From contig NW_026936399.1 in NCBI RefSeq assembly GCF_032062105.1, positions 372,001 through 436,000 of the forward strand: DNA of 64,000 nt. The letters run 5' to 3'. Below are positions 5,244-47,360 of the stretch, piece by piece. The notes beneath the pieces are model-generated. The model saw only the letters and a program-made list of their open reading frames with translations. It was not told the DNA's origin and made no database searches. Every line of letters starts with the position of its first letter. Position 1 is the first letter of the stretch. A program made the position numbers and the translations under genes. The DNA is from Saccostrea cucullata. Its lineage: Eukaryota.

Positions 5244-5768
5244 TCACAAAGGTACATTTTCATCAATGACTTGAAATTGGGCACTACTCTGTCTGCTAGA
5301 CTTTCTGCTCTGCGTTTCGGCAGAAGTGACAACTTCAGGTGTGTCCTCACACGACATTTGAAACACTGAGTCACTTGTCTCATCGCCGTTTGTCATCCTC
5401 ATATCATTGAATTCATCATCTGTCTCTTGCACGGTTCCATTTTTTGGATCACTTCGAGTTTTACCCAACAATGGTTTAGCACTTGACGGAACGTTGGCTA
5501 CACGATTATAAACTCGTTCTCGTCTGTCGTTCTTGCGAAGAATAGACATTTCTTTGAGATAGCTCCTTAGCTGACTGTCTTGTTTGTTTTTGCGTATATG
5601 TGAAGCAATCATCATAACAATAGAAAGTCCGTAAATCATGACGACAGCCACGACATAATATAAGGCCCCGATATCATCCTCGTCCGTGTGGTAGCTATCC
5701 ACCATGGCTTCAAATGTCTCGTTGGCCGTTTTTATCCGAAAGCGAAGTTTACTGGCTATGTCCATCAT
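5244..5768 (-). CDS. KCNE/MinK-like single-pass membrane protein (paralog 1), 174 aa, one coding exon
   Basis: No signal peptide; N-glycosylation sequon NET; one TM 'ALYYVVAVVMIYGLSIVMMIASHI' followed by basic RKNK and 'RSYLKE'; Ser/acidic tail. The pattern matches KCNE1 '[27 protein letters not shown]' (recalled) and the paralog at 46971-47360. Acceptor-like tttattttctggctcgtag lies 3 nt before the ATG. Confidence 0.7.
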   Translation of the reverse strand: MMDIASKLRFRIKTANETFEAMVDSYHTDEDDIGALYYVVAVVMIYGLSIVMMIASHIRKNKQDSQLRSYLKEMSILRKNDRRERVYNRVANVPSSAKPLLGKTRSDPKNGTVQETDDEFNDMRMTNGDETSDSVFQMSCEDTPEVVTSAETQSRKSSRQSSAQFQVIDENVPL

Positions 5769-7656
5769 TTTCTACGAGCCAGAAAATAAAATGAGAAATC
5801 ATTTGCGACGAAAGGTCCAGAGAGACGCACTCGAGAATACACTGTTACTGTCAACCATAAATTCAATTTCTACTTTATTTAAGCTGAACAATAATTTTAC
5901 ATCATCCTTATATCCATTATAGCACTGACGGAAAGAGCATAAACATGTCATTGTACTCAGAAATCACAGTCCCCATTCTTGTATAGAAATATTGGATGCG
6001 AAGTCAAGCGGCTTCTTGCCTTAATTAAGGTTATTTATTTGTTATCATTACAATTTTTCTACTCACTGTCAGCTGCTATATCCATTATTATTACTAACTC
6101 TAGAACTGTGAGACAATAAAAAACATTTGACATTTACCGTATTACGATATTCCTACGCGGTCTTATATTTCCTATGTGACGGTATCCGGGTTACCAAATC
6201 TGACGGTTCTTCTGATCCAATATTCTTGTAATGGCCATCAGGAGAGCTTTCATAACATATCTGAAATACAGCACAATTAACTCATTTATCCAAGTTATTG
6301 TAAACACAGCCCTTTAATTATATACAGCAGTAAAATTTCCATGTTCAAGATTTCCCTAATGAGAGACACCATCAAATGAAATGAACTTGTTTGCAAACTC
6401 AGTAATTTTTCATTACAATTTCATGCCTCGTTTTGCACAATTTAGTAGATGGGTCTTAATCTTTATAAAAATGTGGTTGCAATGGATATAATAACCGATT
6501 CCCAGTTTCTCTCCGAGGACAACAGAAAGCACACGCCTTTTCTGCAAACATTATAGGAAGAACTCGGTATACAGACTATATAGTTAAAATAACCACTACT
6601 TATGTGGTGTAATTCGATTCTAATCGTATTTAATTAAACCATGATATGTAAAACGATATTGTTTTTTTCCACTGCAAAGTGACAAACAGCAAAGTATCGA
6701 TCGAAGAGGTTTAAAGAAGCGATTCTTCCATACATGCAACGAACCTCATGTTGTATTACTAGAAAAAAAAGCAATATTTCTCTGTTTCAAAGAGACATTG
6801 AGAGCAGGTGTTCTTTGATTTTAAGACATACTTGCATGCAAGAATGCGACTTACATTTGCAAATAACTTAAGGTCTCATATAAATCCTTTTCTTTTAAAA
6901 TTAACATTCTAAATATCTTTTTACTACTTGATGATATGGTGCTCAAAATGATATTTTAAATTTTTTTTCTTATTGCATACATTAAACCCTATTGTTAACA
7001 GTTTTCTTTTATAGAATTTTGCTCTTTTTACGTCAACATTGTGCAAAAATGAAATTTGAAGAAACTTAGCAATCTTTGTTGGTCCATCAAAAGCTGTAAG
7101 GTTTATTAAACTTTTTCGTCTTCAAATCCACGTTAAGGACATTGATAAAAATTGGACACAATCAAATGTTTCTTTTACTGATGTGTTATAGCGAAAATTT
7201 TACAGAGTGCAATTTCCAGTTGTGATATTTTCTAGATCCATTGCTATATTATTTTTTTAATTCCAATATGAATTTGATCTGTTTGCAGGCTCTTTCTATG
7301 CGTAGGCTGTAAATAAATGCTTCTAGGTGAGTAAAGATACCCGTCCTTCCCATGTCGTCTGCTAAGCTATATCATACAACACTTCCCCTTAACAAAACGT
7401 GTGAGAAATTCTCACCTGTATCCTATTCTTTACAAGGTGTGTACAAAAAAATCATGAAGATTAATATGTCTAAACACCTAGATGTTAACAATCACACGAG
7501 GCACAAGAGCTTAAAATCTGTGTTGAAAGTTAAGTAAGGATTTTCCCCTTATTTCTTGCCAATTACCGTATATATTTCCTACTTTTATTTCAAAATTTTA
7601 AAAATTCGTCGTCAATTCAGTGTTTAATTAATAGCCTAACAATTACTATGAAAAAC

Positions 7657-8665
7657 GTCAGTCAGCATTTGACTCAATGACAAAGTGCATTTTGTTGACA
7701 AGGTCATTGCATCGATCATATAATTTACGAAATGATGACTTTAAACGAGACTGCTGATGTTCTTGTTGCATCAACTTGTTTGTCAGTAATTTACTTTGTT
7801 TTAGAAATTGTTCATACATAGAGCATGCTTTTGCGTATCGAATCAACTGAGAGATATATAGCCCATATGTAGCTGATGAAGGTATGCTTTTTCAATAAAA
7901 ATGGAGCTCTAAAATTTACAATCCTTATCAATAGTCATTTGTATTTGCAAATTTGTTTTTGTTAAAAACATCCCCCTTGTATACACAAGTACTCTGAAAT
8001 TGATCTTCAAAAGATGCTTGGGTTTCTGATTGACAATATCTATGTGGTTTTGGAGACCATCTACCATCTGTTAGAATTCCCATGAGTATCAATAGTACCT
8101 CATTATATGCAGACCTATTTTTGTATTCATATAAAGCAGATTTTAATTTAGAATCCTATATGTGAAAAGAAAACTTTTGTCGCTGCCTTCAACCATTTAT
8201 TTTGATATATCGACAACGTATTGTCCATCAATTATAGTTATTTCCATTCATTTGTCGAATCTATATATCCCAGTGAGCTTGAAATAGAAGATGCCATCTA
8301 GAATCTGACAAATCTGTTTCATATTAGGATATTTTACTAGAAAAGACGTTAATGGTGATCTAATACATGTGGCAAAATTTATGCTGAACGTGATGACTTT
8401 TCAATGTCAACTTCCCTTACTTATGCAGCATAAAAACAAAATCAGCTGCTTTTAATTTATTTCTCTCAGCTGATTCGATATCAAGATTATGTTTCTACAT
8501 GTGAACAATGTCTAAAATGAGGTAAGGTATAAACAAATAAGTTGATGAAATAAGAATATCAAAACTCTCGTTAAAATTAACCATTTGGTAAGTATTATGG
8601 TCAATGCAATGACCTTGTCAGCAAATACAATCTATCATTCAGTCTAATGCTGACTGACTATTTTC
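7657..8665. mobile_element. Degenerate Penelope-like retroelement: inverted 3' segment (7657-7885, -) joined to RT relic (about 7975-8665, +)
   Basis: Minus strand encodes 'SQLIRYAKACSMYEQFLKQSKLLTNKLMQQ'. Plus strand has decayed 'MLGFLIDNIYVV...YIDNV' and the same C-terminal region, so the two ends are inverted copies. Confidence 0.75.
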
Positions 8666-9739
8666 ATTCTAATAGTTGGAACATTATTTACACACTTAAT
8701 TGTCGGCAGGGGATGTGCACTTCTGTGGATAAGATGTAAGCTAGACATTTTATTCGGTTTGCATAAATCAAAAAAGCGACCCGAAATTACAGCTCTTGTT
8801 GGAGGCGGCAAATTTCCATTTTTCATAATGGCGTCGGTTGTGACGTTTTCCTGACACTGGCAGTCATATATCAAAATCGTTAAAAAAATCTGGAAAGTAT
8901 TAGATTTTTCAAACTATTTAAGTGTATATTATCACAAAAGGAAATGTTATAAATTGTAAATAAAGATGTAAGGTGATTTTTCTTTATTGACTTTAATTTC
9001 CATCATTTGAATAAAAGAAAAATTGAACTTTTCCAAACCCATTTCGCCATATCTCGTTAGCTTTCATTTAGTCATGCCTAGAGTATCATCAATACCATGT
9101 ACAGTTTTTAGTAATAATAGCAATACTATTCAATTTCTTTTTTTATTTGATAAGTGTTCGATTTCATTTCTGGAAAGAAAATCAAGAGAAACACGTTATT
9201 AAGAGAAAAAAATCATCGATGAAATTACAGGAACGAACACACATCGATCGAAGTTAAACTGTTGTTAATACTCTCTAAATCATATGGCTTCTATACTGAA
9301 CTATCAATAAAAAGAAGTTGGCTATCTTGTTTACTGTGCCATTTTACGACAACCGGAGATTGTCGATATGACAAGATTTTACGTTTCCTCTACGCGTTTT
9401 GTATCAGCTTCTACGATAAAGAATCGTGATAATGACTTACAAATATGATCTATTTTTAGAACTTATAAAGACTTGTTTACGTTGTCTTAATGCTTTTTGG
9501 TCTTATTGCTTCTACTCACTATATAAAATAGAATTGTCAAGATAATATAAAATCATAGTTCATTCCATCCGTACATGTATTCTTTTAAAGGATATGCTCA
9601 GTACATTGTACTGCAACGGATTAGAAAAAATATAGATAAGAAGTAAGGCGTCATATGATAAAGAAGATGGACGAACACGGCCAATAATATTCGTACAATG
9701 CGTCAACTATAAAGGTAAAAAATAATATCTCATTTATAA

Positions 9740-10292
9740 ACAAGAGATATTTGTGAAACACTGATACCCCTGTATGGCAGCTTATAGTGAGGCTTAAATT
9801 TTCTCAAATGCAAGTCAAACTTTAGGGTCAAGGTCAAAAGATCAAAATGTTGATATCCAAAGGAAGTACTTGTCACAAGAAATATACCTCTGAAATGTGA
9901 AAGCTCTCATTCTTTTCAAAAATTATGTTCAGTTTTTCAAAACTGGATCAAACTCTAAGGTCAAGGTCAAAAAATAAAAATAAATATTTATACCCATTGA
10001 AGTTCTTATCACAGTTAATACATATATTAAGTATGAAAACCCTAGTACTAACTAATAATTAGTAATGGATAAGGTTAAAACTTAACTTTTTTTGTAAAAG
10101 TGGATTAAACTCCAAGATCATGGTCATGAGGTCAAATTTAGTGGTACAAGGAACACACCAGTGAAATATGAAAGCCACTTGCTCAAAAATATGGTCAAGG
10201 TTATTTTGGAAAAACAGACAAACAAACAAACAAACAGACGGACGGACAAGGCAAAAAATATAAACCCTCGAATCTTCGATTACGGGGGCATT
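9740..10292. mobile_element. Non-autonomous Helentron/HINE (pearl-like) element
   Basis: Starts acaagagatatttgtgaaacactgatacccc; internal repeats with aggtcaaggtca; (ACRG)n-type microsatellite; ends ccctcgaatcttcgattacggggg. Same family as 20128-20968. Confidence 0.75.
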
Positions 10293-10492
10293 AATATATT
10301 CTTAGATATTTAAAAATGCAATTTATAATACAAGAAATAGTTTAAGTTTATTTAGACACAAAAATCATAGCACAATATTTATTTTAGTTGTAAAACTTCG
10401 GTGGTTAAAACGTTTTATATGCAAATTACACTCAGAATGTTTATTGCTAGAGGTTAAATCCCAAGAATACGACATTTTTTTAAATTATAGAA

Positions 10493-10693
10493 TACTGTAT
10501 ACAAAGAAATTTTCGCCCCGTTTTATTTTCGCCCTTGTCACAAATGGGCGAATTTAAAAAGGGGCAAATTCAAAGAACACAGTATAAATTCTTAAACAGA
10601 ACTGGGACTGGGCGAATTAAAAACGGGGCAAATTTGTAAGCAAGTGTAAGAGGGCGAAAATAACACCGGGCGAAAATAACCCTGTATACAGTA
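10493..10693. mobile_element. TA-flanked MITE (Tc1/mariner-type)
   Basis: TIRs tactgtatac...ttttcgccc / gggcgaaaataaccctgtatacagta; internal ggcgaa repeats. A more decayed relative lies at about 22527-22745. Confidence 0.75.
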
Positions 10694-12129
10694 TATTATG
10701 GTAACAAAATTTTCATCAGAATTTTTTTGGGTCAGAATATCATAAATTTAACAATAACTTTACTCGAATTCTAAATATCTCAAAATGTTTAAACAAACAG
10801 TTTAAAAAGAAGATATGAAAATTTATCAAAGATGAAGAAAGTTGTCCTGCCAATCCTAACTTTAAGTTGCTTTGGTGCAACGTACTTTGTTCAAGGTTCA
10901 AGATTCAGTTTAGTTTCTTATTGAAAACTATTACATCTTCTAATCTTTTCAAAATATGATCAAAGAATTTTGATGTAATTTCCATTTCTTTAATATAAAG
11001 ATACTAATAATGATCTTTCATCATTAGACACATCAAAGAAAAGTTTCCATGTAAACCTTTTGAGTGTGAATCTTTCTGGCATTTAAGAGACATTCTGGAT
11101 GAAAATTAAAAGCTTTGTTTAGTCTTCTTTTTCTTTTTCTTTTTTTTACATTGAATTCATCTAATGTTTTAGACGTAAGAAATAAAAAAAAATGTTTTTG
11201 TAAATGATTGGCAATACCATTTTAATTTTAAATGAAATACTTACATCCCTTATTTCCCATTGTTTAAAAAAACGTAACTTCTTTTGAATTTTTTATATTG
11301 ACCTCTTTTTGGTACAAACAAAAAAATACGTTTCTATATCCTCTGCAATGCGATGGAATACTAATATTCAAGACTTTCTTCAGTATTTAATTTTTATATG
11401 TTTTTACTTTTATGAAAAAATTCCAAAAGAATAGAAATTAACAATGTTTATTTCTGCGACAGCTGCCAATGGATCTTTTTTGTGACCTTTAAATCGATAC
11501 AGCAAGTGTGCTTTGTCATAAAGATTCTGATGACAAGCAACGGAAAATTAGGAATAATGATGGATCTCTTTCTGAAGTGCTGCCATTTCCTGAAATGTTG
11601 ATGACCCACATACTTTGAATCTGATACACTTGATGATGGTGTGTGATCGTTTTAAAGGAGAAAAATTGTGAAAAAAAACTTCATTGATTAAACCTACTTT
11701 GAAGGACATTGTATAAACTATTGCACATGATCACAGTGTAATGAAAATTAATTTCTTCTGAAAGTTTCCCCACGTAAATTATTTGCTTTACTCGTACTAG
11801 TAAATACAAGCCTTTACATTTATTATCGGACAAGAAGTGTAGATGGCGGGAAAATTTAAATGTAAAGAAAGTAAAGTTTACAGTTTGTTGAATATATTCT
11901 TCTTATCAGCCTCATATCGTTCATTAAAAATCACAATACTAAGTTCAAATTAATAATTAAACAGATAAACATGAACTTCAAGGAAGATAATAATACAGAA
12001 AGGGGTAATGTGCGTTGAGGACGAGACTATCCTTAGATTGGTTTTTGATTTAACCGACAATTTAGGAATATAAAGAAGTAAAATAATACCAGACTTTTAT
12101 ATTTTTACGACTTGATAGGTTTTTCAATA

Positions 12130-12850
12130 AATCTGTCTCGATAACGAACAGTATTTAAGACCAAATGTCCATAAAACATTGCAAAGTAAGAGCAGAGCAA
12201 ACACGGACTTCCAAAAATCAGAGATGGAATCAGGTGCCATGGAGGAGTGAGCATTACCTGCCGACCGGTCACACCCACCGTGTGCTCTTTGTCATGATCG
12301 AGAAAATAACGGGAAAATCCATCCTCAATTTTGTGTGTAAATAATGGTCTAACAATTAGTATGAAAAACATTAGTTAGCATTTGACATATACAGGGCATG
12401 CGCTTAGGTATCGAGTCAACTGAGAGATATAAACCCCGAATGCAGGTGGTGAAGGTATATTGCTGCATAAGAAAGAGATGTTGACGATTGAAAAGTTAGT
12501 CATCACGTTTATCATCAAGCTTGGTCGTAAGATTACCATTATGGTCTTTTTTGCAATTAAATATCAAAATATGAAACAAATTTGTCAGACTCTTGAATTG
12601 AAGGATACAGTAAGTGTTTTCTTTTTTTTCACCTTTCAGATTTTGGACAAATTCTGCGACATATGAATACAAAAATACGTCTCCTTATAAAGGGGGCGCA
12701 ACCGGTACCCATGGAAATACCAATAGATTGATGGAAGACCTGGTATCCAAAAACACATAGATATTGATTCTGAGAAACTCAAGCATCTTTTGATTTCAAG
12801 TACTTGTGTGTACAGAATATCTTTACACAAAATAATTTTGAAAATTCTCC
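12130..12850 (-). mobile_element. Penelope-like element relic (RT C-terminus plus conserved 3' motif)
   Basis: Contains caggtgccatggaggagtgagcat...ccgaccggtcacaccc and decayed RT C-terminal sequence shared with the other copies. Confidence 0.7.
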
Positions 12851-12983
12851 AAATTTATCGTGGAGAATGAAAGGAAAACATGCTTTACTTTCTTATACAG
12901 CGTTGGAAAATATCTTTTAGCTGTTCGAAATTCCTAAAAAATATGTCACCTATCTAGACACGTGATCGGCATACATGTAAGAA

Positions 12984-13204
12984 TTAAGGAGGCTAGGGGG
13001 TCAACAACTTGTTTTTTTTTTATTAACCACCAGATATAACTTAAATTTTTGGATATATCCTAAGCTGTCAACTATCATTTGGCAAAAAAAATCATAAGTT
13101 TTAGCTTTAAAATTTGATCATTTTATTATATCTTTATATGGAGCTCTTCTTCTAAAGGAGATCAAAATAGTCTAAAAATAGCCACAACCACCCAGCCTCT
13201 TTAA
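12984..13204. mobile_element. TTAA-flanked MITE (Kolobok-type)
   Basis: ttaa-ggaggctagg ... cccagcctct-ttaa: imperfect TIR with TTAA on both sides. Confidence 0.5.
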
Positions 13205-14459
13205 ATTGAAACTTGGTGTCAGGATACCAGACCTAAGACATCGACCAATATATAATTAAACATTCGTAATCCAATTTAACTGTTCTTAAGAGACTAATGA
13301 ATACCAGGTTTCAGGGAAACAGATATCCAGAAATCAATAGGAAAATGAACCTCTCCATATCTGAATGTGCATGTATGCAGAACTCTTTGGAATCATTTCA
13401 ATTATATCAAAATGTTCATGTATATATGTCTAACAAGTAAAAATTAGACGTTGATTAATATCTTTAAATTAAATTACATTCAGGAAAAAATACATGTTGG
13501 TTGGACACTGTTTCAGGGTAATTTATCAGTCATCATAAGATTAAATTAAGGGACATTTAATAAACGATTTTGACTCTAAATTAATTTGAAAAAATCTTTA
13601 ACAGACATTTTTTATTCATTACTTTAAACAATGAAACGTTTATGAAGATGCACATTTTGAATGATGTATGTAGATAACAAAAAAGTAATCATGTTTCAAA
13701 GTCCAAATGAATATGAATAAAGATAAGATCAAGAAAAGACAACCTGAAAACAGCTAACCTCAGAGGTGGAATTCGGTGCTATGGAGAAATAAGCTTCTTA
13801 TAATCCATTTGTCCGATTTGATTGAAAATTATCGCTTACAATTTGCATTGAAAACCTCCAGACAACATTTATCTATCAACAGGCTGCATTTGCAAAGATT
13901 GGTATTGTATCGACATAGAATTTTTGAAATAATGATGCAAAATAGTTGATACCCTTGTATCATCAACGTATATGTTAGTAACCGGGAGAAATAAATGCCA
14001 CATGTAAATAAATTGGTTTATTTGTGTAAACTTCAAGATAAAATACACTCCTGAAGTTCGCCGGTAAGCGTATGTTAAATAAATATTTTAAACCAATCCT
14101 TTCCTTGATCCTTAAATACTTTACTTATTAACAGAAACAGGAAACTATATACATTTAATTAGAACTCATCTTTCGAGTACGACATTCACTGAGTTTAAGA
14201 ATGTGAGAAGTTGTTCTTTTATTAATATGGCATTGGTAAAAGAACTAAAATTAAATAAACAAAAGTATGTGCAGAAAAAGAAATGTATTTCAAACCACTG
14301 ATTCTTACTGATATCAATATAAATTTATATTATAGGTTTTGGAAACATTTTTCAATTAAAAGTTTCTATTATAGTTTCTATTCACTGATAAAACACATCA
14401 CTCATACAAACAACCACAAAGAATCAAGTCTTGATTTTTCTGGCTGATCTTCATTCATA

Positions 14460-15900
14460 AGGTTGTCAGTTGTCACTGTTTTATCAGGTTGTCACTGTTT
14501 TATAAGGTTGTCACTGTTCTATCTGGTTGTCATTGATTTCTCATGTTTTGACACTGTTCTATCACGTTTTTATTGTTCTTTCAGGTTGTCACTGATCTCT
14601 CATGTTGACACTGTTCTATCAGTTTGTCACCATTCTCTCAGGTTGTCACTGATCTCTCTTGTTGTCACTGATCTCTCTTGTTGACACTTTTCAATTAGGT
14701 TGTCACCGTTCTCTAAGGTTGTCACTGATGTCTCCTGTTGACACTGTTCTATCACGTTTTTACTGTTCTTTCAGGTTGTCACTGATCTATCAGGTTGTCA
14801 TTGATTTCTCATGTTGACACTGTTCTATGAAGTTGTCACTGATCTATCTGGTTGTCAATGATTTTTCATGTTGACGCTGTTCTATGAGGTTGTCACTGCT
14901 TAAATCATGTTGACACTGTTCTATGAGCTCGAGGTTGTCACTGTTCTATCTGGTTGTCACGTTCTATGGGGTTGACACTGTTCTATGAGGTTGTCACTGT
15001 TCTATCTGGCTGTCACGTGTATATCAGGTTGTCACTGTTCTACCAGGTTGTCATTGATCTTTCTTGTTGACGCTGTTCTATCAGCTTGTCAGCATTCTCT
15101 CAGGTTGTCACTGATGTCTCATGTTGACACTGTTCTATCACGTTTTTACTGTTCTTTCAGGTTGTCACTGATTTATCAGGTTGTAATTGATTTCTCATGT
15201 TGACACTGTTCTATGAGGTTGTCACTGTTTTAATCATGTTGACACTGTTATATGAGCTCTTGGTTGTCACTGTTCTATCTGGTTGTTACGTTTAGATCAC
15301 GTTGACACTTTTCTATGAGGTTGTCACTGTTCTATCGGTTTGTCACGTTTTTATCATGTTGACACTGTTCTATGAGGTTGTCACTGTTTTATCTTGCTGT
15401 CATTGATTTCTCATGTTGACACTGTTCTATGAGGTTGTCTCTGTTTTATTCATATTGACACTTTCTATGAGGTTGTTACTGTTTTAACCATGTTGACACT
15501 GTTATATGAGCTCTAGGTTGTCACTGTTCTATCTAGTTGTTACGTTTATATCATGTTGACACTTTTAAATGAGGTTGTCACTGCTCTATCGGGTTGTCAC
15601 GTTTTTATCAAGTTTACACTGTTCTATCAGGTTGTCACTGTTCTATCTTGTTGTCACGTTTATATCATGTTGATACTGTTCTATGAGGTTGTCACTGTTC
15701 TATCTGGTTGTCATTGATTTCTCATGTTGACACTGTTCTATGAGGTTGTCACTGTTCTATCGATTGTCACTGTTTATATCATGTTGACACTGTTCTATCA
15801 GGTTGTTACTGTTTATATCGTGTTGACATTGATTTCTCATAATTTCTCATATGTTGACACTGTTCTATCATGTTTTCATTTTTGATCAGGTTGTTACTGT
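14460..15900. repeat. About 19-bp minisatellite (aggttgtcactgttctatc / atgttgacactgttctatg variants)
   Basis: About 1.4 kb of directly visible tandem units; accounts for the spurious ORFs at 14463, 14985 and 15851. Confidence 0.95.
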
Positions 15901-17642
15901 TCCATTAATGCTTCACTATTCAACCAGTTTCTCGTTGGTCCATCAAGTTGTCAAAGTTCTGCAAGTTTTTCACTTTTCCATCGGGTTATCGATGTTCCTT
16001 GAATTACTGTTCCATCATATTGTCTTGTTTAAAATATTGAAACCCAGGGTTCAAATGTACGTAAACCCTGTTGTTATTTCCAATATATTTATTTTGTTAT
16101 TTCCACATTGATACCTTAGATAACATTTAAAATATAAAAAAAAAACCAACTTGACTAGCAAATTACACCTATTCCTTAAGTAATCAAAAATGGCTTATGT
16201 GAAATGCATATTGCAATTCTTTACAATAATAATTGTTGATTACAATCAGTGCATTTCTTTGTATTACTTAGGTTTATCTTCAACAGCGTTTTGTTCAATG
16301 CATCATTTGTCCATTATTCCATTTGTCAAGAATTATAAAGTCATATCATGCGATATCTTTTCTAAAAGTATGCTAATAAATGGGTTTGAGCTTGTCAAAT
16401 AATGGAAGAGGTATCACAATCAGTGCTTAGTAATTACAGGAAATACCCTTGGTACTGATATGAAAAACACCAGATCCTTAATTAATGCTTTATTATATTT
16501 CGATGACTTTGTTATCAAAGTTAATTAGCATCTTTTTCTTCAGTCTTTAGATATTTTATTATTTTCTCAAAGTACATCATATCAAAACAACCACCATTTT
16601 TGGAATTGATTTTTTTAATAACGACTTTATGACATCATGTAAAGGAATTTTATTCCTAAGATACCATGAATGATATTTTGTTGACGAATGTGTTGAATCA
16701 AGTTATTTAGACTTCAATCGAATTTCAAAGGTTGCATGCTTTTAAAGAGGATTTTCCCTAAAATTAAAGATTGCAGTGGAGTTATAATCATCCTTTGAAA
16801 AAGTCTAAAATTACAGTTAATTACTGTACAGGAAGTTAAAGACAGAGTTGAAGCAGTGAACAAAAGCACGCTAATAGTATTGAATTCTCCCAAGTTTTTT
16901 TTTCTGTGACGTATATTTAAGTGTTAAATTATTACTTTTTGAATGTTCTTTAAAAATTGAGCGACGCGAGTTAATCAAAATCATTGTCATTTCCTTGTCT
17001 TTTTGGCTTGTTTAAATGTTAACACTTAGGTTAAAATAAATGTTAACACTTAAAGCAATATGAACTGCATTTTTAAAAATTTTATTTTGATGTTAAAATG
17101 TGTTACCAGGGTATTATGATAAATTTGTATGTAACTTAAACCTTTATGATCAATTAGACTAAAATAAAGCAGAAGAAAGTCTTTTATATGCAATCCAATA
17201 TGCAGTTTTATATAAGAAATCATATTGTACAGGACGACAATAATGTTATTTCGATTCTATCGAACCTTATAAATAGTTCTTCCATCGCAAATATGAGCAA
17301 CAGAAGTTTATTAACGTTATTTTTTTCTGTCATTGAAATAGTTATTTAAAATTTTGCAACAAAAAATTCCGACATCGAAGTTGTAGCTCATATTGCTTTA
17401 AGTTAAAATAAAATAAGGATTCTTTATTTGTTTACCATTAATGCAATGCGCCTAGCATAATCTCTGATTAAGTCGTCAATAAATTTATAACTGTGCTTAT
17501 TGGATACTACAGTTATGAGACACTACCACGGAATTCTTAACAAGTCATTTGTAATTATTGAATGAGTCTTTTCAACTTTCAACATCAGTAATTAATAATA
17601 AGGAAAAAAAACAAGTGTTCTATTAATACTGAAATACAACTT

Positions 17643-18142
17643 GAAAGGGACATGGACACAATTTCAGCAAAAATTTCAAAATTTATTTTTCCATTTTTAC
17701 AAATATTTAACTAGGGTCTTCTTAATGATCATCAAAATTTTGAACGCTAGTTGTCCAGATACAAGACAGATTTAGAGCTCCAAACCTTTGTTATGTAAAC
17801 AGGGCTAGTGTCATGTTTCTGTTTACACTGGTTAATATACTAATATATGTTCATTCAAAGTAGATAATTTCAAATAAAAGTTAATTTTAAATACGATTCG
17901 ACAGTTACTATTGATTTCCTGAACTTCATTTTGTTATAAATATGATATTTTCTATATGTAACAAAAAAAAAGGCACGAGCCTTGTTTACATTATGAAGAA
18001 CTATAAGTTCTGTATCTTGTTTGTTAATCAACAAATGATGTTCAAATTTTTGAAAATCAATAGATGATGCCTTAGGTAGGATTTGTAAACATTAAAATTG
18101 GTTTTAAAAAATCAGTTGAAACTGTGTCCAGGCCCCTTTTAA
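17643..18142. mobile_element. Kolobok-type non-autonomous DNA transposon
   Basis: TIR aaagggacatggacaca ... tgtgtccaggccccttt; internal inverted segments (tgttatgtaaacagggct / gagccttgtttacatta). Confidence 0.65.
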
Positions 18143-18569
18143 CCAAAGAAACACAAACACTCTTCCATGGCAACTGATCCCATCTCTAATGTTTTAAAGG
18201 TCCGTGTTTGCTCTGCTCCAAAATGTGTATTGTTTAATGGACGTTGACCTTGAATACTGTTCATTATTTCCATATATTTCATGCAAGCAAATACAACTAA
18301 ATCAGATGTACTTCTTTCTCAGCAATTGTATTTGTCATCTGAGTATTAGTGGGTTTTGATGAAGACCTCTGTAAATTTTTGTAGGATGCTCCAAATATTG
18401 ACGCTGACATGACCATTTGTCTCAATAATAATGGAGTAATTCTTGGCCTATTATCACGAGGTCGTATAAAGCTTGGCAACATCTGACCAATTCAGTCATG
18501 TATTGTCAATTATTTGGATAGTTTAATAAATGTGTACCTTCAAATCCGCCTTAATTTTATTTTTTCCGT

Positions 18570-18634
18570 GTAAATTACAATAAGACACGAAGTCTCAACA
18601 CCTGGTTGAGTCTTCGTGGCTTATTGTTATTTAC
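18570..18634. repeat. 65-bp imperfect palindrome (30-bp arms, 27/30 matches)
   Basis: gtaaattacaataagacacgaagtctcaac-acctg-gttgagtcttcgtggcttattgttatttac. Confidence 0.8.
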
Positions 18635-20127
18635 CTATCAATTTACAGAAAGAAGATTTCGTTTAGAAGTGTTTTGCATTGGGACACCTGAACATGGAAA
18701 GAATTCAACAAATAATAAATGGACAAGATTCTGGTATCTTTTTCAAATAAACAAATCATTTTAAAGATTAATTTGCCTAGACAGTGAAACATTCTTTCAG
18801 TGCAGATTATGACATACAATCAGCCTTTAAACAAGTATTGAGTATTAATTATAAACTTAATTTAAATTTCTATTTTATTATTTTTTTCAAAATTACCTTT
18901 AAAACCAGACTTCTGGTAGCTCTATTAAAACCTCTAAGAAAGACTCTGCGTTATCTCTCTCTTAAGCCAGATCACACCATTCAATGGTAGATACATACTT
19001 CTCGTCTTTTTAAATCACAAACTTTTCTCTTTATAGTCCTCTATATGATAAAGCAAACCAAATTAAATTTCCTTGTCACTTCACAGAATATAAACATTAT
19101 TTTATAGAAATAATAATAATGCTCTACTTACTTGTATTAAATAATGATAAATGCTCTCACGATCCCCTTTCATTCCACTTTGAATTGAAATACATAAACC
19201 CTCGAAATCGATGGTGTAATTATAGGACAACGTTTAAAAATTGAATACAAGCTGCTTTCTCAGGACCGAGTAAATGAGATTTGATTGTCATGAAAGAGGC
19301 TTACTAGAAGCTTGATGGGGATTACGTGGGCAAAACGTCCAGCAATCACCCCCAAACAGATTTACCCATAGGAGATTTGTATCCTTAAGAGGAAAAGGTT
19401 TCCATTTTTTAATGGATAGAAAAACGATGCAATCATAGGTCACTTTCCAGTCACATTTTAATCAGGATTAAGAATGGCAAGTCATACATCAGATACTCGT
19501 TTAACAACCATTTACTGAGGATGTAGGGATTTGTTTTTGAAATTATATTTGAAAATCTGAAAATTGAAAATTGACTGAAAAGCAAAAAAGTTGAAAATGT
19601 CAAACCTTTAGAAAGTCATGCATATATTTTTTTAAAAAAAACTTTTGGCAAGTAATCGTAAAACTATATTTTATGTTTGTTGATTTGTTTGTCACAGAGT
19701 GATACGTCAAGCTAACATGCAGAAAATTTTCTTCCTCTTCCAGAAACAAAAAGGTGTAGTTTAAATGCAACAAAGGAATTCTTGAGAAAAATGAAAAGCA
19801 ATAAAGTATCTCCAACTGAGAGAAACCCCCTTTTTTTTTTTTGCAAAATGCAGCAATATTGTTTTATCGCCAGTTATCGTGGGATATTTCCGGTAATTCA
19901 CTTTACCGACAATGAACTTTTCATGTCGACATGCGAAAATATTATCTACATTGTTTTCGTTTTACTTTTCTTGTAGTCCATTTTATTTAGTATGATATCT
20001 ACGGTAACTATACCCGCTCCAAATTTTTTTTTTCATCTAGTACGCAATTTCAACATGTCAAAACAACCAAATTTAAATTTTCTATTTCTTATGTGTATGT
20101 TTCTTTCATACTCTTAAAAACAATGCA

Positions 20128-20968
20128 AGACAAGATGTGTTTGTGAAACACTGATGCCCCCGTATGGCAACATACTAGTAGCGAAGATAAACTTTTCTTA
20201 AATGCAAATTAGATATGTTGATACCCAAAGAAGGGTCTTCTCAGAAGAAATACAATTTTGAAATATAATAAAAGCCTAGCTCAACCTGATCAAAACTTAT
20301 GGCCAAGAATTAGTGTTTAAAAAGTAGGTCAAATCCCAGTGTCAAGGTCAAATTGTCAAAGATGTTGATTCCTTGTTGTCAAAAAGATTACATATATGAA
20401 GTAAGAAAGCCCTAGAACTAACCGTTAAAAAGCTATGGCCAATGTTAAAGTTTTTAAAAACGAGGTTAAACTCCAAGTTCAAGGTCAAAGGAACTTGGTA
20501 TCCAATAAAAGGTCTTGTCACAAGAATTACATACATGAAACATGAAAGCCCTAGTTCTTACCGTTTAAAAGTTATGGCCAAGGTTAACATTTTTTCATAA
20601 GCACGAACATTTCCAAGGTCAAGGTGAAGAAGTTAAAGTTGTTGATATCCAATTAAAGGTCTTGTTACAAAAAATACATATACATATATGAAGTATGAAA
20701 GCCCTAGTATTCCAAAATTATGGACTAAGTAAAAGTTTGGAATTTTTGTGTAAAAGTGGGTCAAACTCCAACGTCAAGGTCAAAAGATCAAATTTGGTGG
20801 TACCCAAAGAAAGCTCTTGTACTTAAATATGAAAGCTACAGCTCCACTAAAAAGTTATGGGAAAAATTAAAGACTTTGTGGACAAACAGACAGAAAGGCA
20901 GATAGACAGACGGACGGACACGACAAAAAAACTATATACCCCCGCATCTTCGATTACGGGGGAATACA
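20128..20968. mobile_element. Non-autonomous Helentron/HINE (pearl-like) element with internal tandem repeats
   Basis: Same termini as 9740-10292; several degenerate internal repeats (aaggtcttgtcacaag...tatgaaagccctag...ttatggccaagg); acagacggacggac microsatellite. Confidence 0.8.
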
Positions 20969-21289
20969 AACGTTTCTTTTGAGGAACTGATTAGTACTTA
21001 CTTTGACGGAATTTACATTTAATGCTATATACGTTTCACAAATAAACTCTAAAAGATGATTGATGCGACAATAAAGAAAATTAATTCAACTAGGAAATAA
21101 ATTTCTGTTGAATAAATTGCCAATATTCAATAATAAATTTGGTCAAAGGCTCTTTTCCAGACATGTTTTCACTTTAAATGACCTCATGCAGCTATCATTT
21201 TTGGAAATACTAGCATAATTAATACGTTGCAGTTTATCTGTTTATACTGTATACTTTAGAAATTTTTCAAATTACATATCACATGGTAC

Positions 21290-22090
21290 CAATTGCGCCC
21301 CGTTATTAGCAGACTTATTTTTGTAGTTTGTATGAAGCAAAATTTATACGTGAAAAGAGGAAAACACTTATTGTGGCCTTCAACTCGACATTTAGATATA
21401 TCGACAACGTATTGTAAATTAACACTGGTTATTTCCATTCTAATTCGTCAAGATATATCCCGGTGACCTTGAAATAATAGAAACCACAGAATCTGACACA
21501 TCTGTTTCACGTTTGGATCTTTTACGTGAAAAGGCGTCAATGGTTATCAAACAACAAAGCTTTATGATAAACTTGATGACTTAATTTTTCAATCTTTAAC
21601 TTTCTTTACTTATGTAGCAATAAACCTTTGTCACCTGCATACGAAGTTTATATCTCTCAGTTGTTTCGATACGGAAGAGCATGCTCTACGTATGAACAAT
21701 TTCTAAAAGAAGCAAGTTATTGAAAACAAGTTAACGAAGAAAGAATACCAACAGTTTCATGTAAAGTCATCATTTTATAAGTTCTGTGGTCGATACAATG
21801 ACACTGTCAGCAAATACAATTTATCATTAAGTCAAATGTTGACAGAATTTTTTTCATACTGATTGTTAGGCCATTATTTATACAATGGGTTGTCCACGGA
21901 TTTTTTCTATAATTTCTCGATCATGACAAGGTGCACAAGAGGCGGATGTGACCGGTCGGCAGGGGAAGCTCACTCCTCCATGGCACCTGATTCCACTTTT
22001 GATGTTTTGGAAGTTGTTTGTTCCGCTCCTAGTTTGTAATGTTTCATGGACTTTTGAGTTCGAATACGATTCACTTTCTTCACAAATTTC
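21290..22090 (+). mobile_element. Penelope-like RT relic with 3' end
   Basis: Decayed 'GTNCAPLLADLF...FNSTFRYIDNV...YDKLDD...YISQLFRYGRACSTYEQFL' followed by the conserved 3' motif at about 21945-22000. Confidence 0.8.
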
Positions 22091-40916: not shown

Positions 40917-43299
40917 TTTGACTTTATGTATATTTCTATTTGTTTACATTTAGCAAACTACATCTACATATGTAGATCTAGTTGTGTATTCATACGCCGT
41001 GATTAAGTTTTGAGTGTGTTATAGGAATTTGAATGTTTTGGATTTCCAATGCATTTCTTTGGTGAGAATTACACTGAATGTAAATATTTCCATATATTTC
41101 ATTCTTTAAAAGAAATAAAAATTATCAAAACAGCAATAAGCATATTACCTCTACATATTTCTTGACCAAGGCTGTTCTATCCATGAAAAATACAATCACG
41201 TACATACCATAACTACAATATTTCATTTACCAAATCCTACTTTAAATGGTTATAATGTACATAAGTATAAACATTAGAATATCTTTGTTTGTTAGTAGGG
41301 TAATTAACGTTAACGTTACATGTATTGCTGGAAAAAATTACAAAACCCGCATACGCAGGTTATGCCTTTTTTCTGCATCAGCGGCAAAATTAATTACCGT
41401 ACTAACAACCCAAAGAAGGTATTTTATTGTTTAATAATACGACCTTTCAAAATTAAGGTAATAGTCGTAGTCAATGAATGGATCGAAGGAGCAATGATTG
41501 CAGAATTGATGGACATGATACTCGAACGACAAACTATGTGTTATTTGAATCTTTACGTTGTTATGCTTACGTTTTACTGCTTAGTTATTTTTGAAATAAA
41601 ATGCTAAAATCAGATTAAAGTGTGAAGATTATTATCAATCAAATATACTAAGCTGTGTTCGCAAAATAAGGCGAACATTTCAAACCTTTTTTTTTAAAAG
41701 AGACCAATTTTGAAGATTTAAATTATCTCTCCAGAAAATCATTTTTAGAGTATAAAAGCATTTTGGTAAAATTATTTTTGTCAATATCTCTATTTCACTG
41801 GTCATTAGATGCATTCGTGATTAGAACCTAATCAACTTGGGATTTCATTTGATCTCTGAATATAACCACGAGGCTCTAATACACAAGATTAACTATTAAT
41901 TCCTGCCTTCAATCCGTTTTACTATAAGAATCCTTGTATAAGATACAGGAGTGGTTTTTAGTCGATACGGATTTGAATGCGCCGATACAGTCAGCAGCTC
42001 CTCCATTTACTGACTGCTCGATTTATATGCCAAGATTTGCTTCAAATTTCTGCGGATATTTTTAATTGTTTTCACATATGTGTTTATATCAAGATGTTTT
42101 AATTCATTAATAATGTTTTTATGTCACTTATTCCTACACTGTAAATTCAATAACACTTCAAACGTTTTTTTTTCCTTTTATGATTACGAACAGAAACCGA
42201 AACAATGCAAATTTGGAGCACAGGAAAGACGGGCTTCCAATCAGTTAAGAGGCATAAAAATGTGCATGTTACATAGAGCGGACTCTTTCGTATCGAATCA
42301 ACTGGAAGATATAAACCCCATATGCAGGTGTTAAGGGTATATTGCTAAATAGGTATTGGCATAGTTTGTTGACCATATATATATAGCCACATAAACACCA
42401 ACAAGAAACAAACAACGTTTTATTTTGCATGTATGTTTCCTCTTATTATTTAAGAGACTCGTACATGTACCCGTTTGTGCATATCTTCGGCTTTCTTTAA
42501 ACTTTATATCAATCTCTCTTATATTCCTCCCATACTTATATGTGTTAACCGCCAACTATATAACCTGCACCTTCATCATCACTTCTCTTACAGCCTATTG
42601 TGACTATCTTCATCAGTCACGTATTAAATTGATTAACAAAGCTTTTATACGTCTTCCTGGTTTTTAAAAAAAATGTACATGTTAACAATCCGTAAATCTC
42701 TTATGCTCTCATACAGTAAAAATAAGATCAGTAGCCAAATGTGTATAAATGAATTGCAAAACAACTGTAAGAAGCACGTAGCACAATTGCTACGGTAACA
42801 AAGTTTAGCTATTATTTCCCCCAAGAGAACAATGCTCAGAAGATATCAAAATTGGTCCCTTGTTAACAAAGGAAATAAAACATAATCTTAAGTTTCTAAA
42901 GAAGGCTAGTTTCAAATTCAGTATTGATTTTGGTTTACAGCATTCACAGAAAAAGTTTGAAGGATTAGAGAAATTTTGTAAAATCTCCTTACTTTGATTA
43001 ATTTTTTTAATCAATCTTAACCTTTAAAAAGTCGGTTTGTTACATACATTTCCTTGTGCTTATGCATAAAATAATGAACGATAGATAAAATTATACTCAT
43101 TCGCTGATTTTTCTCCACAAGGAAAAAAACCCTTCAGTTTAGTGCAAAAGAAACTATAGAGAAATCAAAGTTCTTTTTCTGCTACCTTTGTTTTTAACTT
43201 AATCCGAACTCTGAGACAAACATAATTGCAGGTGTTTGATAAATGATGAAATTGTTCCAAGTGTCACCCAAAAATAGATATTTAAAAGAGCCATAACCT

Positions 43300-43624
43300 A
43301 CATCGTTGATTATGAAGAAATAAAATTTATGATAAAATTTCCAAAATTTTGAAGTATGTGGTTCCAGGGTCACTGGTTCCTTTGGGGTTGGGTTCACAAC
43401 TGGTTATAAAAGGGAAGTGCATTTTCTCTTTGTTACTCTGATCTACGTCTGGGTATTAAGAAAATAGCGTAAGCATGACAAGTTTATAATTAGGATAAGC
43501 AATTGTGCCTCTTTCAAAATTGTGAATTTCATGGTCTCTGGTTTAAAACACGAACCAAATTCAATTGTTGGAAAGTTGTTGCATGATACTCAGGTGACCT
43601 ATAAGGCCCGTGGGTCTCTTGTTT
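43300..43624. mobile_element. Helentron/HINE remnant
   Basis: Ends ctcaggtgacctataaggcccgtgggtctcttgtt, resembling the hairpin + CTTGT terminus of these elements. Confidence 0.5.
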
Positions 43625-45023
43625 ATTAATGAAACGAATTTGCAACTTTAGAATTTTAACAATATGTCATTTTTCCTCTTCTAGTTTCATAAGATTTTCA
43701 TGGCTTCGTTAATTCCCCTGGGAAAAGGAAAGTAATTAATTTTGGTAATGATATTTAAGAGCTTAGGAGAAAAAAGATTAGAAATTTAATCTTGGTCTGC
43801 TGTTTCCTGTTTTCCTTGAGAAGTATTACAACTTAAGAGGATTAATTATGACATCAATATAACTTCTTTTTTAACATTTTTGAGATGCGTGAAGATATCT
43901 TTTTATTTGACTTATTCTTGAAAAAAATGGGAACCAAAATGATATTGTGCATTTGCAAATTGAAGAAATAAGACATAAAGTAAAAAGAAAATTATTAATT
44001 GACTAATGTGAGACATATAGCAAGATGCAAGTGAACAAGAAAATATCAGTAACCCATTTACTTAAGATTGTTTCAAGCAACATGTGAATTTACAAAAGCC
44101 TTTTCAAAGTTTGAGATACATGTTATAAATAATAAACACAGAAATCACATATTATAATACAGGTTCATTTTCTACACAAATAAATGAATGAACAAGAATG
44201 ATTTCCACTCAATCGTTCATAGATTTTGTAGGAACTTTTTTTTTCTTTGTAAATTTTGTTTGGCGAGATTAAAAATATCCAAGTTAAGTAAACCTTTTTC
44301 TAATATGATTCAGAATATTATTACTGGTTTTCAATTAGAAAAGTACTAATCAGTGATCGAATAAAAAATCTACATTCAATACAAAAAATACTAGTATGTG
44401 AACAGGGCTTAAAGAATGGACCATAAAAAATTCTAGAGGTGGTTTCAGGTGCCATAGAGGAGTAAGCATCCCTCACTTACTGGTCACACCCGCAGAGAGT
44501 CCTATTTATTTATTTATTCGGCAGACGGAACATTTCCGTACTTAAATTCGGAATTAAAACAAACATTTAAAAGTTGGTATAAACGTCAGCCAAATACGAC
44601 CCAATAGTGTCATATATTTGTTAACAAGGTTATTTTAACCACCATACAACTGACATATGCTGGTTTTACAAGAGGGTGTTGAAATATCTTTACCATCAAT
44701 TATGACGGTATTAATAGTGCCTATATAAAAACCTTTTTTGGAAAATCAACGTTTTCAAACGTGTAATTCGTTAATAGTTCATTAACATAAAACATAAAGG
44801 AAAACAACGCTTTTTTGTAGTTTTAATTTGACATATTTACATTATTCAAAACTATCAGATTATAATACGCATATATACAAATATGTTCGTTTTTATTTGT
44901 GTATGAAATTATCTTTTAGCCTTTCAATCATTGCAATATACATACAAAGAATTCACCCAAAATATGTCCCACCTTAACTTAAACCATTTTTTTCTGTAAA
45001 ATTATGAAAACGTTCTTACAAAT

Positions 45024-45025
<2 letters not shown>

Positions 45026-45106
<81 letters not shown>

Positions 45107-45620
45107 CACATTTTACAACAACTCTTAAACTAACATAACTGCCCTAAGTGAAGAAATATTAATACAGAAAGCACAAAGAAATTCACTTTTACATGGATAC
45201 CCACTTCCGCCCCAGCCCGGGGTTGAACTCTCGACCTTCGGAATCTGTCTCCTAGCAGTGCAGGAACAGCGCGCTCAACCGCTCGGCTATCTAGGCAAGT
45301 AAAAACTTGCTTTCGATGCCGATGGAAATTAAACACCTATTGGCGGCGCTGCCCTACACTACACGGTCATTGAGAATAGAAGTAGGATACAGTTATTTGG
45401 ACATTAGTTTTAACAGAGGATTGTTACCAATACATGTTGTAATGAAATTAATTATTATTTATAAAGCACATTTTACAACAACTCTTAAACTAACATAACT
45501 GCCCTAAGTGAAGAAATATTAATACAGAAAGCACAAAGAAATTCACTTTTTTCATGGATACCCACTTCCGCCCCAGCCCGGGGTTGAACTCTCGACCTTC
45601 GGAATCTGTCTCCTAGCAAT

Positions 45621-45696
<76 letters not shown>
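45026..45696 (-). mobile_element. tRNA-containing 360-bp unit in about 1.44 tandem copies, embedded in a (TA)n microsatellite
   Basis: 45101-45258 is repeated almost exactly at 45461-45618; (TA)n on both sides. Minus strand has A box tagccgagcgg and B box gagttcaacc. Confidence 0.8.
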
Positions 45697-45698
<2 letters not shown>

Positions 45699-46970
45699 TT
45701 TTTAATTTTTTGGGAAAAAAATTCGCGTTTAAACGTTAAACTAAAAGAGAAAGCCACATTCCGTGTGATTATAATTTTAACAACTGGTTTAAAATTAGCA
45801 TATATGATCAACCACTATTTAGAAAAAAAATCTAGATATCACAAACTGCTTACTCCTTTTAAGCTATAAAAAAAACTCATATGCAATAAAACACGTAATC
45901 GAACAAAATATGATAGATTTAACTGAGTTACCGGTACTTTAAACATTTAAAAAAACATATTTATATAACTAAAGGTAAAAGATTACAATTAGCTTTTGGT
46001 ACATGTTACTTTGTAAGAAATTCAAGTCATGTTTCTTTAACATTGAAAAAATAGATTTGGCATGTTTGTAATTTTTGAAAAACACAAATGACTAAACTTG
46101 TCTTTTTAAAAAAAGGCAAAATAAGTAATTTTCATTTATAGATGCATAGAAATAATATGAACTTCATATTATCAAGTTTATTTCATGTTCAAACATGAAA
46201 TATTTATGCTCACATATTTTTTTCACAGTTTTATAAAGTATAAATGATGTATTCATTGATTTTTGGCTGAAGTTGAAATTCTACCAGTTTCTGAAAATGG
46301 AATTACAAGATAAATTGACATATTTCCTGAAAAATGTGTTCCCCAAGGTGACGCAATGGTCGTCGTTTATTTTCTGTTCAATGATATTTCCCTTCCTGAG
46401 TGTGTCAACGTTTTATCGAAATTCCATCATACTAAACCCTTGGGGGATCAGAGATGATATAGTGTATAATTAAATATTATATTAATCGCAAAAGACATGC
46501 AAGATGCCAATCTACCGTAAATGGTATCGCAAAAAGAAAATGTAAATGTTCCCCATTTTGTAGAGTTTATGTAGAATGATAAGCTTCGGGTTAATTAAAG
46601 TAATATATTTAAAGCATATTTGTTTTCTTTTTCAAACACTTTTAAATTATTCAGATCTTTTAATTAAAGTTTTCTAAATTTTGATTATTCAAAATTCACA
46701 TTGCGATTAAGTGTAAGCATTTATCAAACTATAACAATTGCAAAAAAAAAATTAAAATTAAGATGAATAAAATGTATAATATTCTATGTACTTTAATGTA
46801 GATGCACCTATGATTAATTAACAATGTATTTTAAAATCATGAATATTATAAATATATCTAAATAATCAAAAATGTTCATAGTATGTTTCCAACATAAATC
46901 AATTTAAATATATAAACACTGGTGCATTGTTGCATACAAACATAAATTAACCCTGTTTTATGAAACTGTA

Positions 46971-47360
46971 CTAAATTTTCAGGGGTTTTACTGAAGGACT
47001 TTTATTTTCTGCCTTAATTTCATCCGCTTCCAAAGGAATATTAACCTTAAGGTCTATTTTTGGTAACAGTGTCTTCTTGCTGTCTTCATTGTTTCTCTCC
47101 AGGTATTCATCATAATAATCCACTTCCTGTCCTTCTCTGCGCTGCTTCCGGATCTGGGTTGCTATGAGAACCATTAACGCTGTGCCATAGAACATGATCA
47201 CCACGACTACGTAAAGTAGCTCATTAAGATTGCTGTCCTTGAACGTCACAGTTTCTCCTTTAATCTCAATAATCAAGGAGTTATTTAATTTTCGAAGTAA
47301 ATCTGGATCTGACGAATTGAGATGAACATGAACGGTTGCCATTGTGCTTCTGAAAGGCAT
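46971..47360 (-). CDS. KCNE/MinK-like single-pass membrane protein (paralog 2), 129 aa
   Basis: Sequons NSS and NNS; TM region 'NELLYVVVVIMFYGTALMVLIATQIRKQRRE...YYDEYLE' versus recalled KCNE4 '[31 protein letters not shown]'; single coding exon. Confidence 0.75.
   Translation of the reverse strand: MPFRSTMATVHVHLNSSDPDLLRKLNNSLIIEIKGETVTFKDSNLNELLYVVVVIMFYGTALMVLIATQIRKQRREGQEVDYYDEYLERNNEDSKKTLLPKIDLKVNIPLEADEIKAENKSPSVKPLKI

What the first reader, a model, noticed from the sequence alone, without database searches (positions are those of the whole stretch)
5244..47360. Tandem pair of KCNE/MinK-like K+ channel beta-subunit genes in an invertebrate genome
Seen: two same-strand, single-coding-exon genes about 41 kb apart. 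Both encode signal-less single-TM proteins with N-terminal sequons and a shared motif LY-x-V-x-V-xxx-YG-x6-IA-xx-IRK...YL[KE], and are unalignable elsewhere. Known: this topology, gene structure and TM/juxtamembrane pattern define KCNE1-5 (KCNE4 [14 protein letters not shown]...MKSKRRE, recalled), KCNE1/KCNE2 are themselves neighbours, and canonical KCNEs are generally regarded as vertebrate-restricted apart from the divergent C. elegans MPS proteins. Inference: a cluster of unrecognised lophotrochozoan KCNE homologues that could modulate KCNQ/Kv channels, which would push the family's origin back to early bilaterians.
Basis: partly seen in the sequence, partly recalled or inferred. Interest (0 to 1): 0.9.

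Follow-up and report, generated by a model that had tools for sequence, protein, structure and literature searches.

The report
Hidden KCNE-like gene family in oysters
Two small, unnamed oyster genes belong to a family of at least nine, also found in snails, segmented worms and ribbon worms, whose closest known relatives are the KCNE proteins that tune potassium channels in the human heart and ear and that recent papers describe as absent from invertebrates.

Summary
Both ORFs are real, conserved genes of a Saccostrea-type oyster. Each encodes a signal-less single-pass membrane protein with N-terminal sequons, from one coding exon behind a splice acceptor. They are ancient paralogues (hhalign 96%), linked in scallop and pearl oyster, and part of a family with at least 9 loci in this genome and members in bivalves, gastropods, annelids and a nemertean.

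Three searches point to KCNE. Pfam ISK_Channel hits 30 of 35 gene-B orthologues, two family members pass its cut-off, and it is absent from the listed hits of 22 decoys. An invertebrate-only profile ranks KCNE1/2/3 as its top nine PDB hits (best E 0.006). ESM Atlas puts KCNE-type clusters first for both genes. Each signal alone is weak, and gene A's link is largely indirect. The genome has two KCNQ1-type channels that keep five of six residues reported to matter for KCNE modulation.

Homology is about 85% likely; a Kv-channel beta-subunit role about 55%, untested. Nothing ties this pair to the KCNE1/KCNE2 tandem. Papers from 2024 and 2026 say no canonical invertebrate KCNE is known.

The parts
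5244..5768 (-). Gene A coding exon, 174 aa single-pass membrane protein (A subfamily)
   Evidence: 73 homologues in bivalves, gastropods and Owenia, 95% to Saccostrea echinata LOC133184601
5550..5678 (-). Gene A conserved core, aa 31-73: acidic patch, TM helix, basic IRK stop-transfer, juxtamembrane Y70/E73
   Evidence: invariant columns of alignment A1; hydropathy
5715..5723 (-). N16 glycosylation sequon; the Asn is invariant in 44 aligned homologues
5772..5795 (-). Pyrimidine tract and AG acceptor 3 nt upstream of the ATG; implies untranslated 5' exon(s) (inferred)
   Evidence: same acceptor 4-6 nt before the ATG in scallop, pearl oyster and Tubulanus orthologues
46971..47360 (-). Gene B coding exon, 129 aa from the first ATG, probably 123 aa from ATG 47342 (B subfamily)
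   Evidence: 42 homologues; dN/dS about 0.05 against an oyster homologue
47094..47237 (-). Gene B conserved core, aa 42-89: TM helix, IRKQRRE basic patch, YYDEY juxtamembrane motif; the part that matches ISK_Channel and KCNE2
47277..47318 (-). Two N-terminal sequons (N15, N26)
47350..47355 (-). TTTCAG splice acceptor 7 nt upstream of the probable start codon (inferred)

Best explanation
Genes A and B are two anciently diverged members of a lophotrochozoan branch of the KCNE (MinK/MiRP) superfamily. Shown: they are conserved single-helix proteins encoded by one exon, in a family of at least 9 oyster loci. Inferred from sequence: they insert without a signal peptide, with a glycosylated N-terminus outside and a basic, tyrosine-bearing segment inside. 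Inferred by analogy with vertebrate KCNEs: the helix packs between the voltage sensor (S1) and pore of a voltage-gated K+ channel, most likely one of the oyster's two KCNQ1-type channels, possibly also other Kv channels. Each paralogue would shift gating, current size or surface delivery in its own way. Homology about 0.85; Kv beta-subunit function given homology about 0.65.
For: Pfam: ISK_Channel is the only hit for gene B (E 0.038), hits 30 of 35 B orthologues and is the best hit of all five C-subfamily proteins tested; P0098 (23.3 bits) and P0198 (22.9) pass the 22.1 cut-off. It is not among the 25 of 26 families listed for 22 TM-like decoys. PDB: gene B's only hit is KCNE2; paralogue C's top 7 hits are KCNE1/2/3; profile A4's top 4 are KCNE1/2; profile A5's top 9 are KCNE1/2/3, best E 0.006 among 177,635 sequences. 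A5 holds no A sequence yet finds gene A at E 2e-10. ESM Atlas: gene B's top hit is a KCNE1 cluster (0.94, 215/256 features); gene A's are an ISK_Channel cluster (0.92) and a KCNE4 cluster (0.90). Paralogue C aligns to KCNE1 without gaps across the TM, keeping Y46, V50, L51, F53, M62, Y65, R67, K70 and E72 (numbers counted from the alignment). Two KCNQ1-type genes keep F123, F127, F130, G272 and V334.
Against: No single E-value is strong: the best against PDB is 0.006, from a profile in which 4 of 25 rows were chosen knowing their Pfam score. The unselected A and B profiles found no KCNE in PDB, and A3 ranked CD9 above KCNE2. Family A hits ISK_Channel in only 2 of 44 members. A frame with no ATG-started ORF elsewhere in this genome also passes the Pfam cut-off, so the cut-off proves little by itself. 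The D-P of the KCNE1-3 juxtamembrane motif is absent. Fold searches were uninformative. Oyster KCNQ1 has L or M at V324. There are no expression, interaction or current data.
Confidence: 0.55

Rival explanations
1. They are true members of the wider KCNE-like superfamily (KCNE, SMIM34, SERTM1/2), but their partner is not a Kv channel: a two-pore K+ channel as for SERTM2-TASK1, or another channel or transporter.
For: SMIM34 clusters score as high as KCNE1 for gene B (0.94, 0.93) and SERTM1 scores 0.90. SERTM2 resembles KCNE1-3 in its TM and binds TASK1 (PMC12019361). KCNEs also act on channels other than KCNQ1 (PMC13516689). Nine divergent paralogues exceed what two KCNQ1 genes obviously need.
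Against: The SERTM family (PF15872) is not among the listed Pfam hits of any member. The top Atlas rows are ISK_Channel clusters, and oyster KCNQ1 keeps most of the KCNE-contact residues.
Confidence: 0.27
2. Convergence: an unrelated lophotrochozoan family of signal-less single-pass proteins whose aromatic-rich helix and basic stop-transfer happen to resemble KCNE.
For: The match is about 50 residues, half of it a TM helix. E-values are marginal. Some members also hit RCR, TMEM154, SMIM5/18/22 or LMBR1 weakly. Noise can pass the Pfam cut-off.
Against: The same family ranks first in three libraries from several divergent queries (B, C, A4, A5, and A in the Atlas). The match continues 20-25 residues past the membrane. 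Decoys do not show it.
Confidence: 0.14
3. The A-B pair is the direct counterpart of the vertebrate KCNE1-KCNE2 tandem, so the cluster itself is bilaterian.
For: The pair is tightly linked in three bivalve orders, and both types lie on one chromosome in Owenia.
Against: The Owenia A and B genes are 36 Mb apart. The oyster has two other tandem pairs, so local duplication is common. Lamprey has a single KCNE0. The neighbour here is NWD1-like.
Confidence: 0.03
4. The ORFs are not real genes.
For: No RNA reads from this species could be examined.
Against: Invariant cores across phyla, dN/dS about 0.05, RefSeq gene models in several species and conserved splice acceptors.
Confidence: 0.01

Closest known systems
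Vertebrate KCNE1-6 and lamprey KCNE0 (Pfam PF02060 ISK_Channel)
   Same: Single TM, no signal peptide, N-terminal sequons, single coding exon; ungapped TM alignment with shared Tyr at the helix start, F-[YF]-[GA] in mid-helix, Y-[IL]-R after it, and a Tyr-acidic segment about 15 residues later.
   Different: Only about 25-30% identity in the core. No D-P in the juxtamembrane motif. Mid-helix triplet differs (for example S-I-V in paralogue C against F-T-L in KCNE1). At least 9 loci, in two deep clades unrelated to the vertebrate numbering. Function untested.
SMIM34 (vertebrate, KCNE-like)
   Same: Atlas score 0.93-0.94 to gene B; 13-31% of cluster members carry PF02060.
   Different: I could not separate SMIM34 from KCNE as closest relative, because no sequence was available by reference.
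SERTM1/SERTM2 (PF15872)
   Same: KCNE-like single-pass micropeptides with a sequon; SERTM2 binds the K+ channel TASK1 (PMC12019361); Atlas 0.86-0.90.
   Different: Lower scores than KCNE in the Atlas and not among the listed Pfam hits.
C. elegans MPS-1 to MPS-4
   Same: Invertebrate single-pass Kv beta-subunits described as MiRP/KCNE-like (PMC4210162, PMC13516689).
   Different: Described as nematode-specific. No MPS family appeared in any Pfam or Atlas list here; not compared directly.

Membership tests
KCNE (PF02060) | One TM helix and no cleaved signal peptide | tested here: met
   Hydropathy of all 9 paralogues shows one peak and no N-terminal hydrophobic stretch; no dedicated signal-peptide predictor was available
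KCNE (PF02060) | N-glycosylation sequons in an extracellular N-terminus; basic residues after the helix | tested here: met
   All 9 paralogues have 1-4 N-terminal sequons; net charge is negative before the helix in all and basic residues follow it. Orientation itself is inferred
KCNE (PF02060) | Score above the Pfam gathering cut-off (22.1 bits) | tested here: inconclusive
   Gene B 14.2 bits; gene A no hit; homologues P0098 23.3 and P0198 22.9 pass; a noise frame also passes
KCNE (PF02060) | KCNE is the best-ranking known family for the profile | tested here: met
   PDB top 9, top 4, top 7; Pfam 30/35; Atlas rank 1 for both genes. Exceptions:
KCNE (PF02060) | Whole TM and core in one coding exon behind 5' untranslated exons (vertebrate gene structure from my own knowledge) | tested here: met
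   Intronless ORFs with an acceptor just upstream in oyster, scallop, pearl oyster and Tubulanus; in Owenia A the core lies in the last exon. Some predicted gastropod or annelid products end abruptly after the TM, which may mean introns in those lineages; not checked
KCNE1/2/3 subgroup | Juxtamembrane D-P-[YF]-x-x-Y-I motif | tested here: not met
   D-P is absent; the later aromatic and Tyr positions align. From memory KCNE4 also lacks it, so this argues against the subgroup, not the family
KCNE (PF02060) | Monophyly with KCNE0-6 to the exclusion of SMIM34 and SERTM | not testable with these tools
   No vertebrate sequence could be obtained by reference, so no joint tree and no profile-profile comparison was run
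KCNE (PF02060) | Assembles with and modulates KCNQ1 or other Kv channels | not testable with these tools
   Only indirect: two KCNQ1-type genes keep 5 of 6 reported residues
SERTM1/2 (PF15872) | Match to the SRTM1 profile | tested here: not met
   Not among the listed Pfam hits (the lists show at most 25 families)

The most novel reading that the evidence does not exclude
KCNE beta-subunits date back to the last common ancestor of protostomes and deuterostomes, expanded into a large family in lophotrochozoans (625 clusters at 50% identity; at least 9 loci in one oyster), gate native KCNQ1 there, and were lost rather than never gained in Ciona, whose KCNQ1 differs at contact residues that the oyster keeps.
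Probability: 0.45. Interest if true: 0.85.

Novelty: new variant of a known kind. Interest (0 to 1): 0.77.

Why it matters
[quoted passage not shown] A conserved, expanded lophotrochozoan branch would move the origin to early bilaterians and turn Ciona's lack into a probable loss. It would offer a possible bridge to the disputed nematode MPS proteins. It also gives nine natural variants and two native KCNQ1 partners for a standard oocyte assay of what makes a KCNE activating or inhibiting. Molluscan and annelid K+ currents may be shaped by subunits nobody has considered. One limit on novelty: an Atlas cluster of mostly mollusc proteins already carries automatic PF02060 hits in 25% of members, so the signal sits in databases, although I found no paper that describes it.

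Tried and rejected
A PF02060 scan of the own genome in six frames returned only noise and missed every true paralogue; it serves as a caution on the cut-off. Profiles of family A alone and family B alone found no KCNE in PDB. AlphaFold models of gene B and paralogue C are one long helix (pLDDT 63 and 71); Foldseek, Atlas shape search and VIA gave generic coiled-coil matches. CD9/CD81, LMBR1, IL15, RCR and TMEM154 hits were rejected as weak TM matches that are not consistent across subfamilies. The Logan contig of a gene-B homologue keeps the intron-side acceptor, so it is not evidence of splicing. Vertebrate KCNE sequences had no reference id, so I left out the profile-profile comparison and the joint tree rather than type them.
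Full report
Observation. Both ORFs exist as described: gene A at 5244-5768 (-), 174 aa, and gene B at 46971-47360 (-), 129 aa. The host is an oyster of the Saccostrea type, inferred from 95% identity of gene A to S. echinata LOC133184601; the window is G000:C18536:372001-436000. Each protein has one hydrophobic segment, no signal-like N-terminus and N-terminal sequons. The two align at E 2e-9 both as sequences and as family profiles.

The genes are real. Gene A has 73 homologues in bivalves, gastropods and the annelid Owenia, with a nearly invariant core. Gene B has 42, in bivalves and the gastropod Gigantopelta. Against an oyster homologue, gene B shows dN 0.12 and dS about 2.3; in the core dN is 0.02 (dS is near saturation, so the ratio is rough). 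A splice acceptor 3-6 nt before the start codon of gene A is kept in scallop, pearl oyster and the nemertean Tubulanus, which implies one coding exon behind untranslated exons.

The family is larger than the pair. Successive profiles found seven more loci in this genome: C (C16440), D (C97 and C23226, probably alleles), E and F 0.4 kb apart (C1242), G and H 60 kb apart (C20932; H also on C23533) and I (C8196). All have the same anatomy; H and I are the weakest members (genome-wide E 0.005 and 0.04). A profile of the A and B cores matches 625 clusters at E up to 0.001 among 1.84 billion proteins, of which only 150 could be seen. The named ones are molluscs, Owenia, Ridgeia and Tubulanus. An unrooted tree of 47 cores splits into an A-like group (A, E, F, H, I) and a B/C-like group (B, C, D, G) at 99/99 support, with Owenia on both sides (few columns, long branches for D to G). 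A and B therefore diverged before molluscs and annelids split.

Linkage. In scallop, B lies about 63 kb upstream of the A gene model on the same strand. In pearl oyster, B is 67 kb from A but inverted, and an NWD1-like gene converges on A as it does here. In Owenia an A-type and a B-type gene share a chromosome but lie 36 Mb apart. Tight linkage is thus shown only for three bivalve orders, and nothing ties it to the KCNE1/KCNE2 pair.

Is it KCNE? Pfam: ISK_Channel is gene B's only hit (E 0.038), matches 30 of 35 B orthologues with the next family at 13, and is the best hit for all five C proteins tested. Two homologues pass the curated cut-off. Family A matches in only 2 of 44. Among 22 natural TM-like decoy segments, ISK_Channel is not among the 25 of 26 families listed; this control is small and mostly made of spurious frames. 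A frame with no ATG-started ORF elsewhere in the genome also passes the cut-off, so rank and consistency matter more than the threshold. PDB: KCNE2 is gene B's only hit, KCNE1/2/3 are paralogue C's top seven, and KCNE1/2 are the top four for the broad profile A4. For A5, a B/C/D/G profile, the top nine hits are KCNE1/2/3 with best E 0.006; four of its 25 rows were picked knowing their Pfam scores, so that E-value is flattered. Unselected A and B profiles found no KCNE. A5 contains no A sequence yet finds gene A at E 2e-10, which gives the indirect link for A. ESM Atlas, a different method, ranks a KCNE1 cluster first for gene B (0.94, 215 of 256 features) followed by SMIM34, and ranks ISK_Channel and KCNE4 clusters first for gene A (0.92, 0.90). 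By the tool's own calibration, shuffled proteins reach 0.9 in 4-10% of cases, but usually with fewer shared features. Fold searches on what is a single helix were uninformative. I put homology to the KCNE superfamily at about 0.85. I could not run a profile-profile comparison or a joint tree with vertebrate KCNEs, because none was available by reference.

Mechanism. The genome holds two KCNQ genes (C6865/C21435 and C10650/C11462). Their exons, searched one by one and never joined, match KCNQ1 far better than KCNQ2-5 (30 of 31 residues in one exon; E 3e-12 against 0.01 in S1). Nakajo et al. 2011 (PMC3206303) used Ciona KCNQ1, from an animal without KCNE, to identify F123, F127, F130, G272, V324 and V334 as important for KCNE1 or KCNE3 action. 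Both oyster channels keep five of the six and have L or M at 324 (S1 numbering from the PDB alignment, S5 and S6 numbering counted from landmarks in the paper). This fits a retained interface but could also reflect slow evolution. The most likely working model is a glycosylated single-pass subunit whose helix sits between S1 and the pore of KCNQ1 or another Kv channel and retunes gating or trafficking, with a different effect per paralogue. That step is inference. The main rival is a KCNE-like protein with another partner, as SERTM2 has in TASK1 (PMC12019361).

Novelty. Kasuya et al. [quoted passage not shown] Kasuya et al. 2026 (PMC13516689) repeat this for canonical KCNEs and set the nematode MPS proteins apart. 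Searches of the full-text library for KCNE together with oyster, mollusc, annelid, Aplysia, protostome or invertebrate found no description of this family; the library lacks most subscription journals. All named members are annotated as uncharacterised or hypothetical, although automatic PF02060 hits exist on a mostly mollusc Atlas cluster. The scan's own index held nothing on KCNE.

Verdict. A real, conserved and undescribed lophotrochozoan gene family that very probably belongs to the KCNE superfamily, with function untested. Novelty: new variant of a known kind. Interest 0.77.

Noticed in passing
G000:C10650, L052:3251-4692: One haplotype of a KCNQ1-type gene carries an 81-bp tandem repeat (17.8 copies, 94% match) whose unit includes the splice acceptor and the start of the pore-loop exon, so the GYG selectivity-filter codons are repeated about 18 times. 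The other haplotype (L056) shows a single copy.
   Followed up: partly
G000:C6865 / C21435 and C10650 / C11462: Two distinct KCNQ1-type genes; no KCNQ2-5-type exon was among the four candidates scored.
   Followed up: partly
G000:C1242:34418-35470 (L011): Two further family members (E, F) lie head to tail only about 0.4 kb apart, each with its own upstream acceptor-like AG.
   Followed up: partly
window 18-875 (+): Last exon of a WD40/NWD1-like gene converging on gene A; the same arrangement occurs in Pinctada.
   Followed up: yes
   Followed up: partly
window 51634-60460 (-): Exons of a probable single-pass receptor with fibronectin-like pieces and a Ser-rich, Tyr-bearing tail upstream of gene B; no Pfam hit above noise.
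   Followed up: partly
window 28609-29082 and 32472-32840 (-): Fragments that look like reverse-transcriptase retroelement remnants between the two genes (by eye, no Pfam hit for the one tested).
   Followed up: no
ESM Atlas rotifer cluster (115 aa, 69 members): An unnamed, mostly rotifer cluster scores 0.88-0.90 to both genes and may extend the family across Spiralia.
   Followed up: no
P0204, P0215, P0227: A long (413-507 aa) subfamily of unknown taxon within the A-like group; could widen the range if it is not lophotrochozoan.
   Followed up: partly
decoy set A6: One decoy segment matches RBP_receptor (STRA6-like) at E 5e-13, so it is a real exon; it is not L040:389-577 and was not identified.
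   Followed up: partly
G000:C15695, L030:1428-2597 (+): Intronless 390-aa stretch with a TM segment and what looks like a TIR domain (by eye).
   Followed up: no
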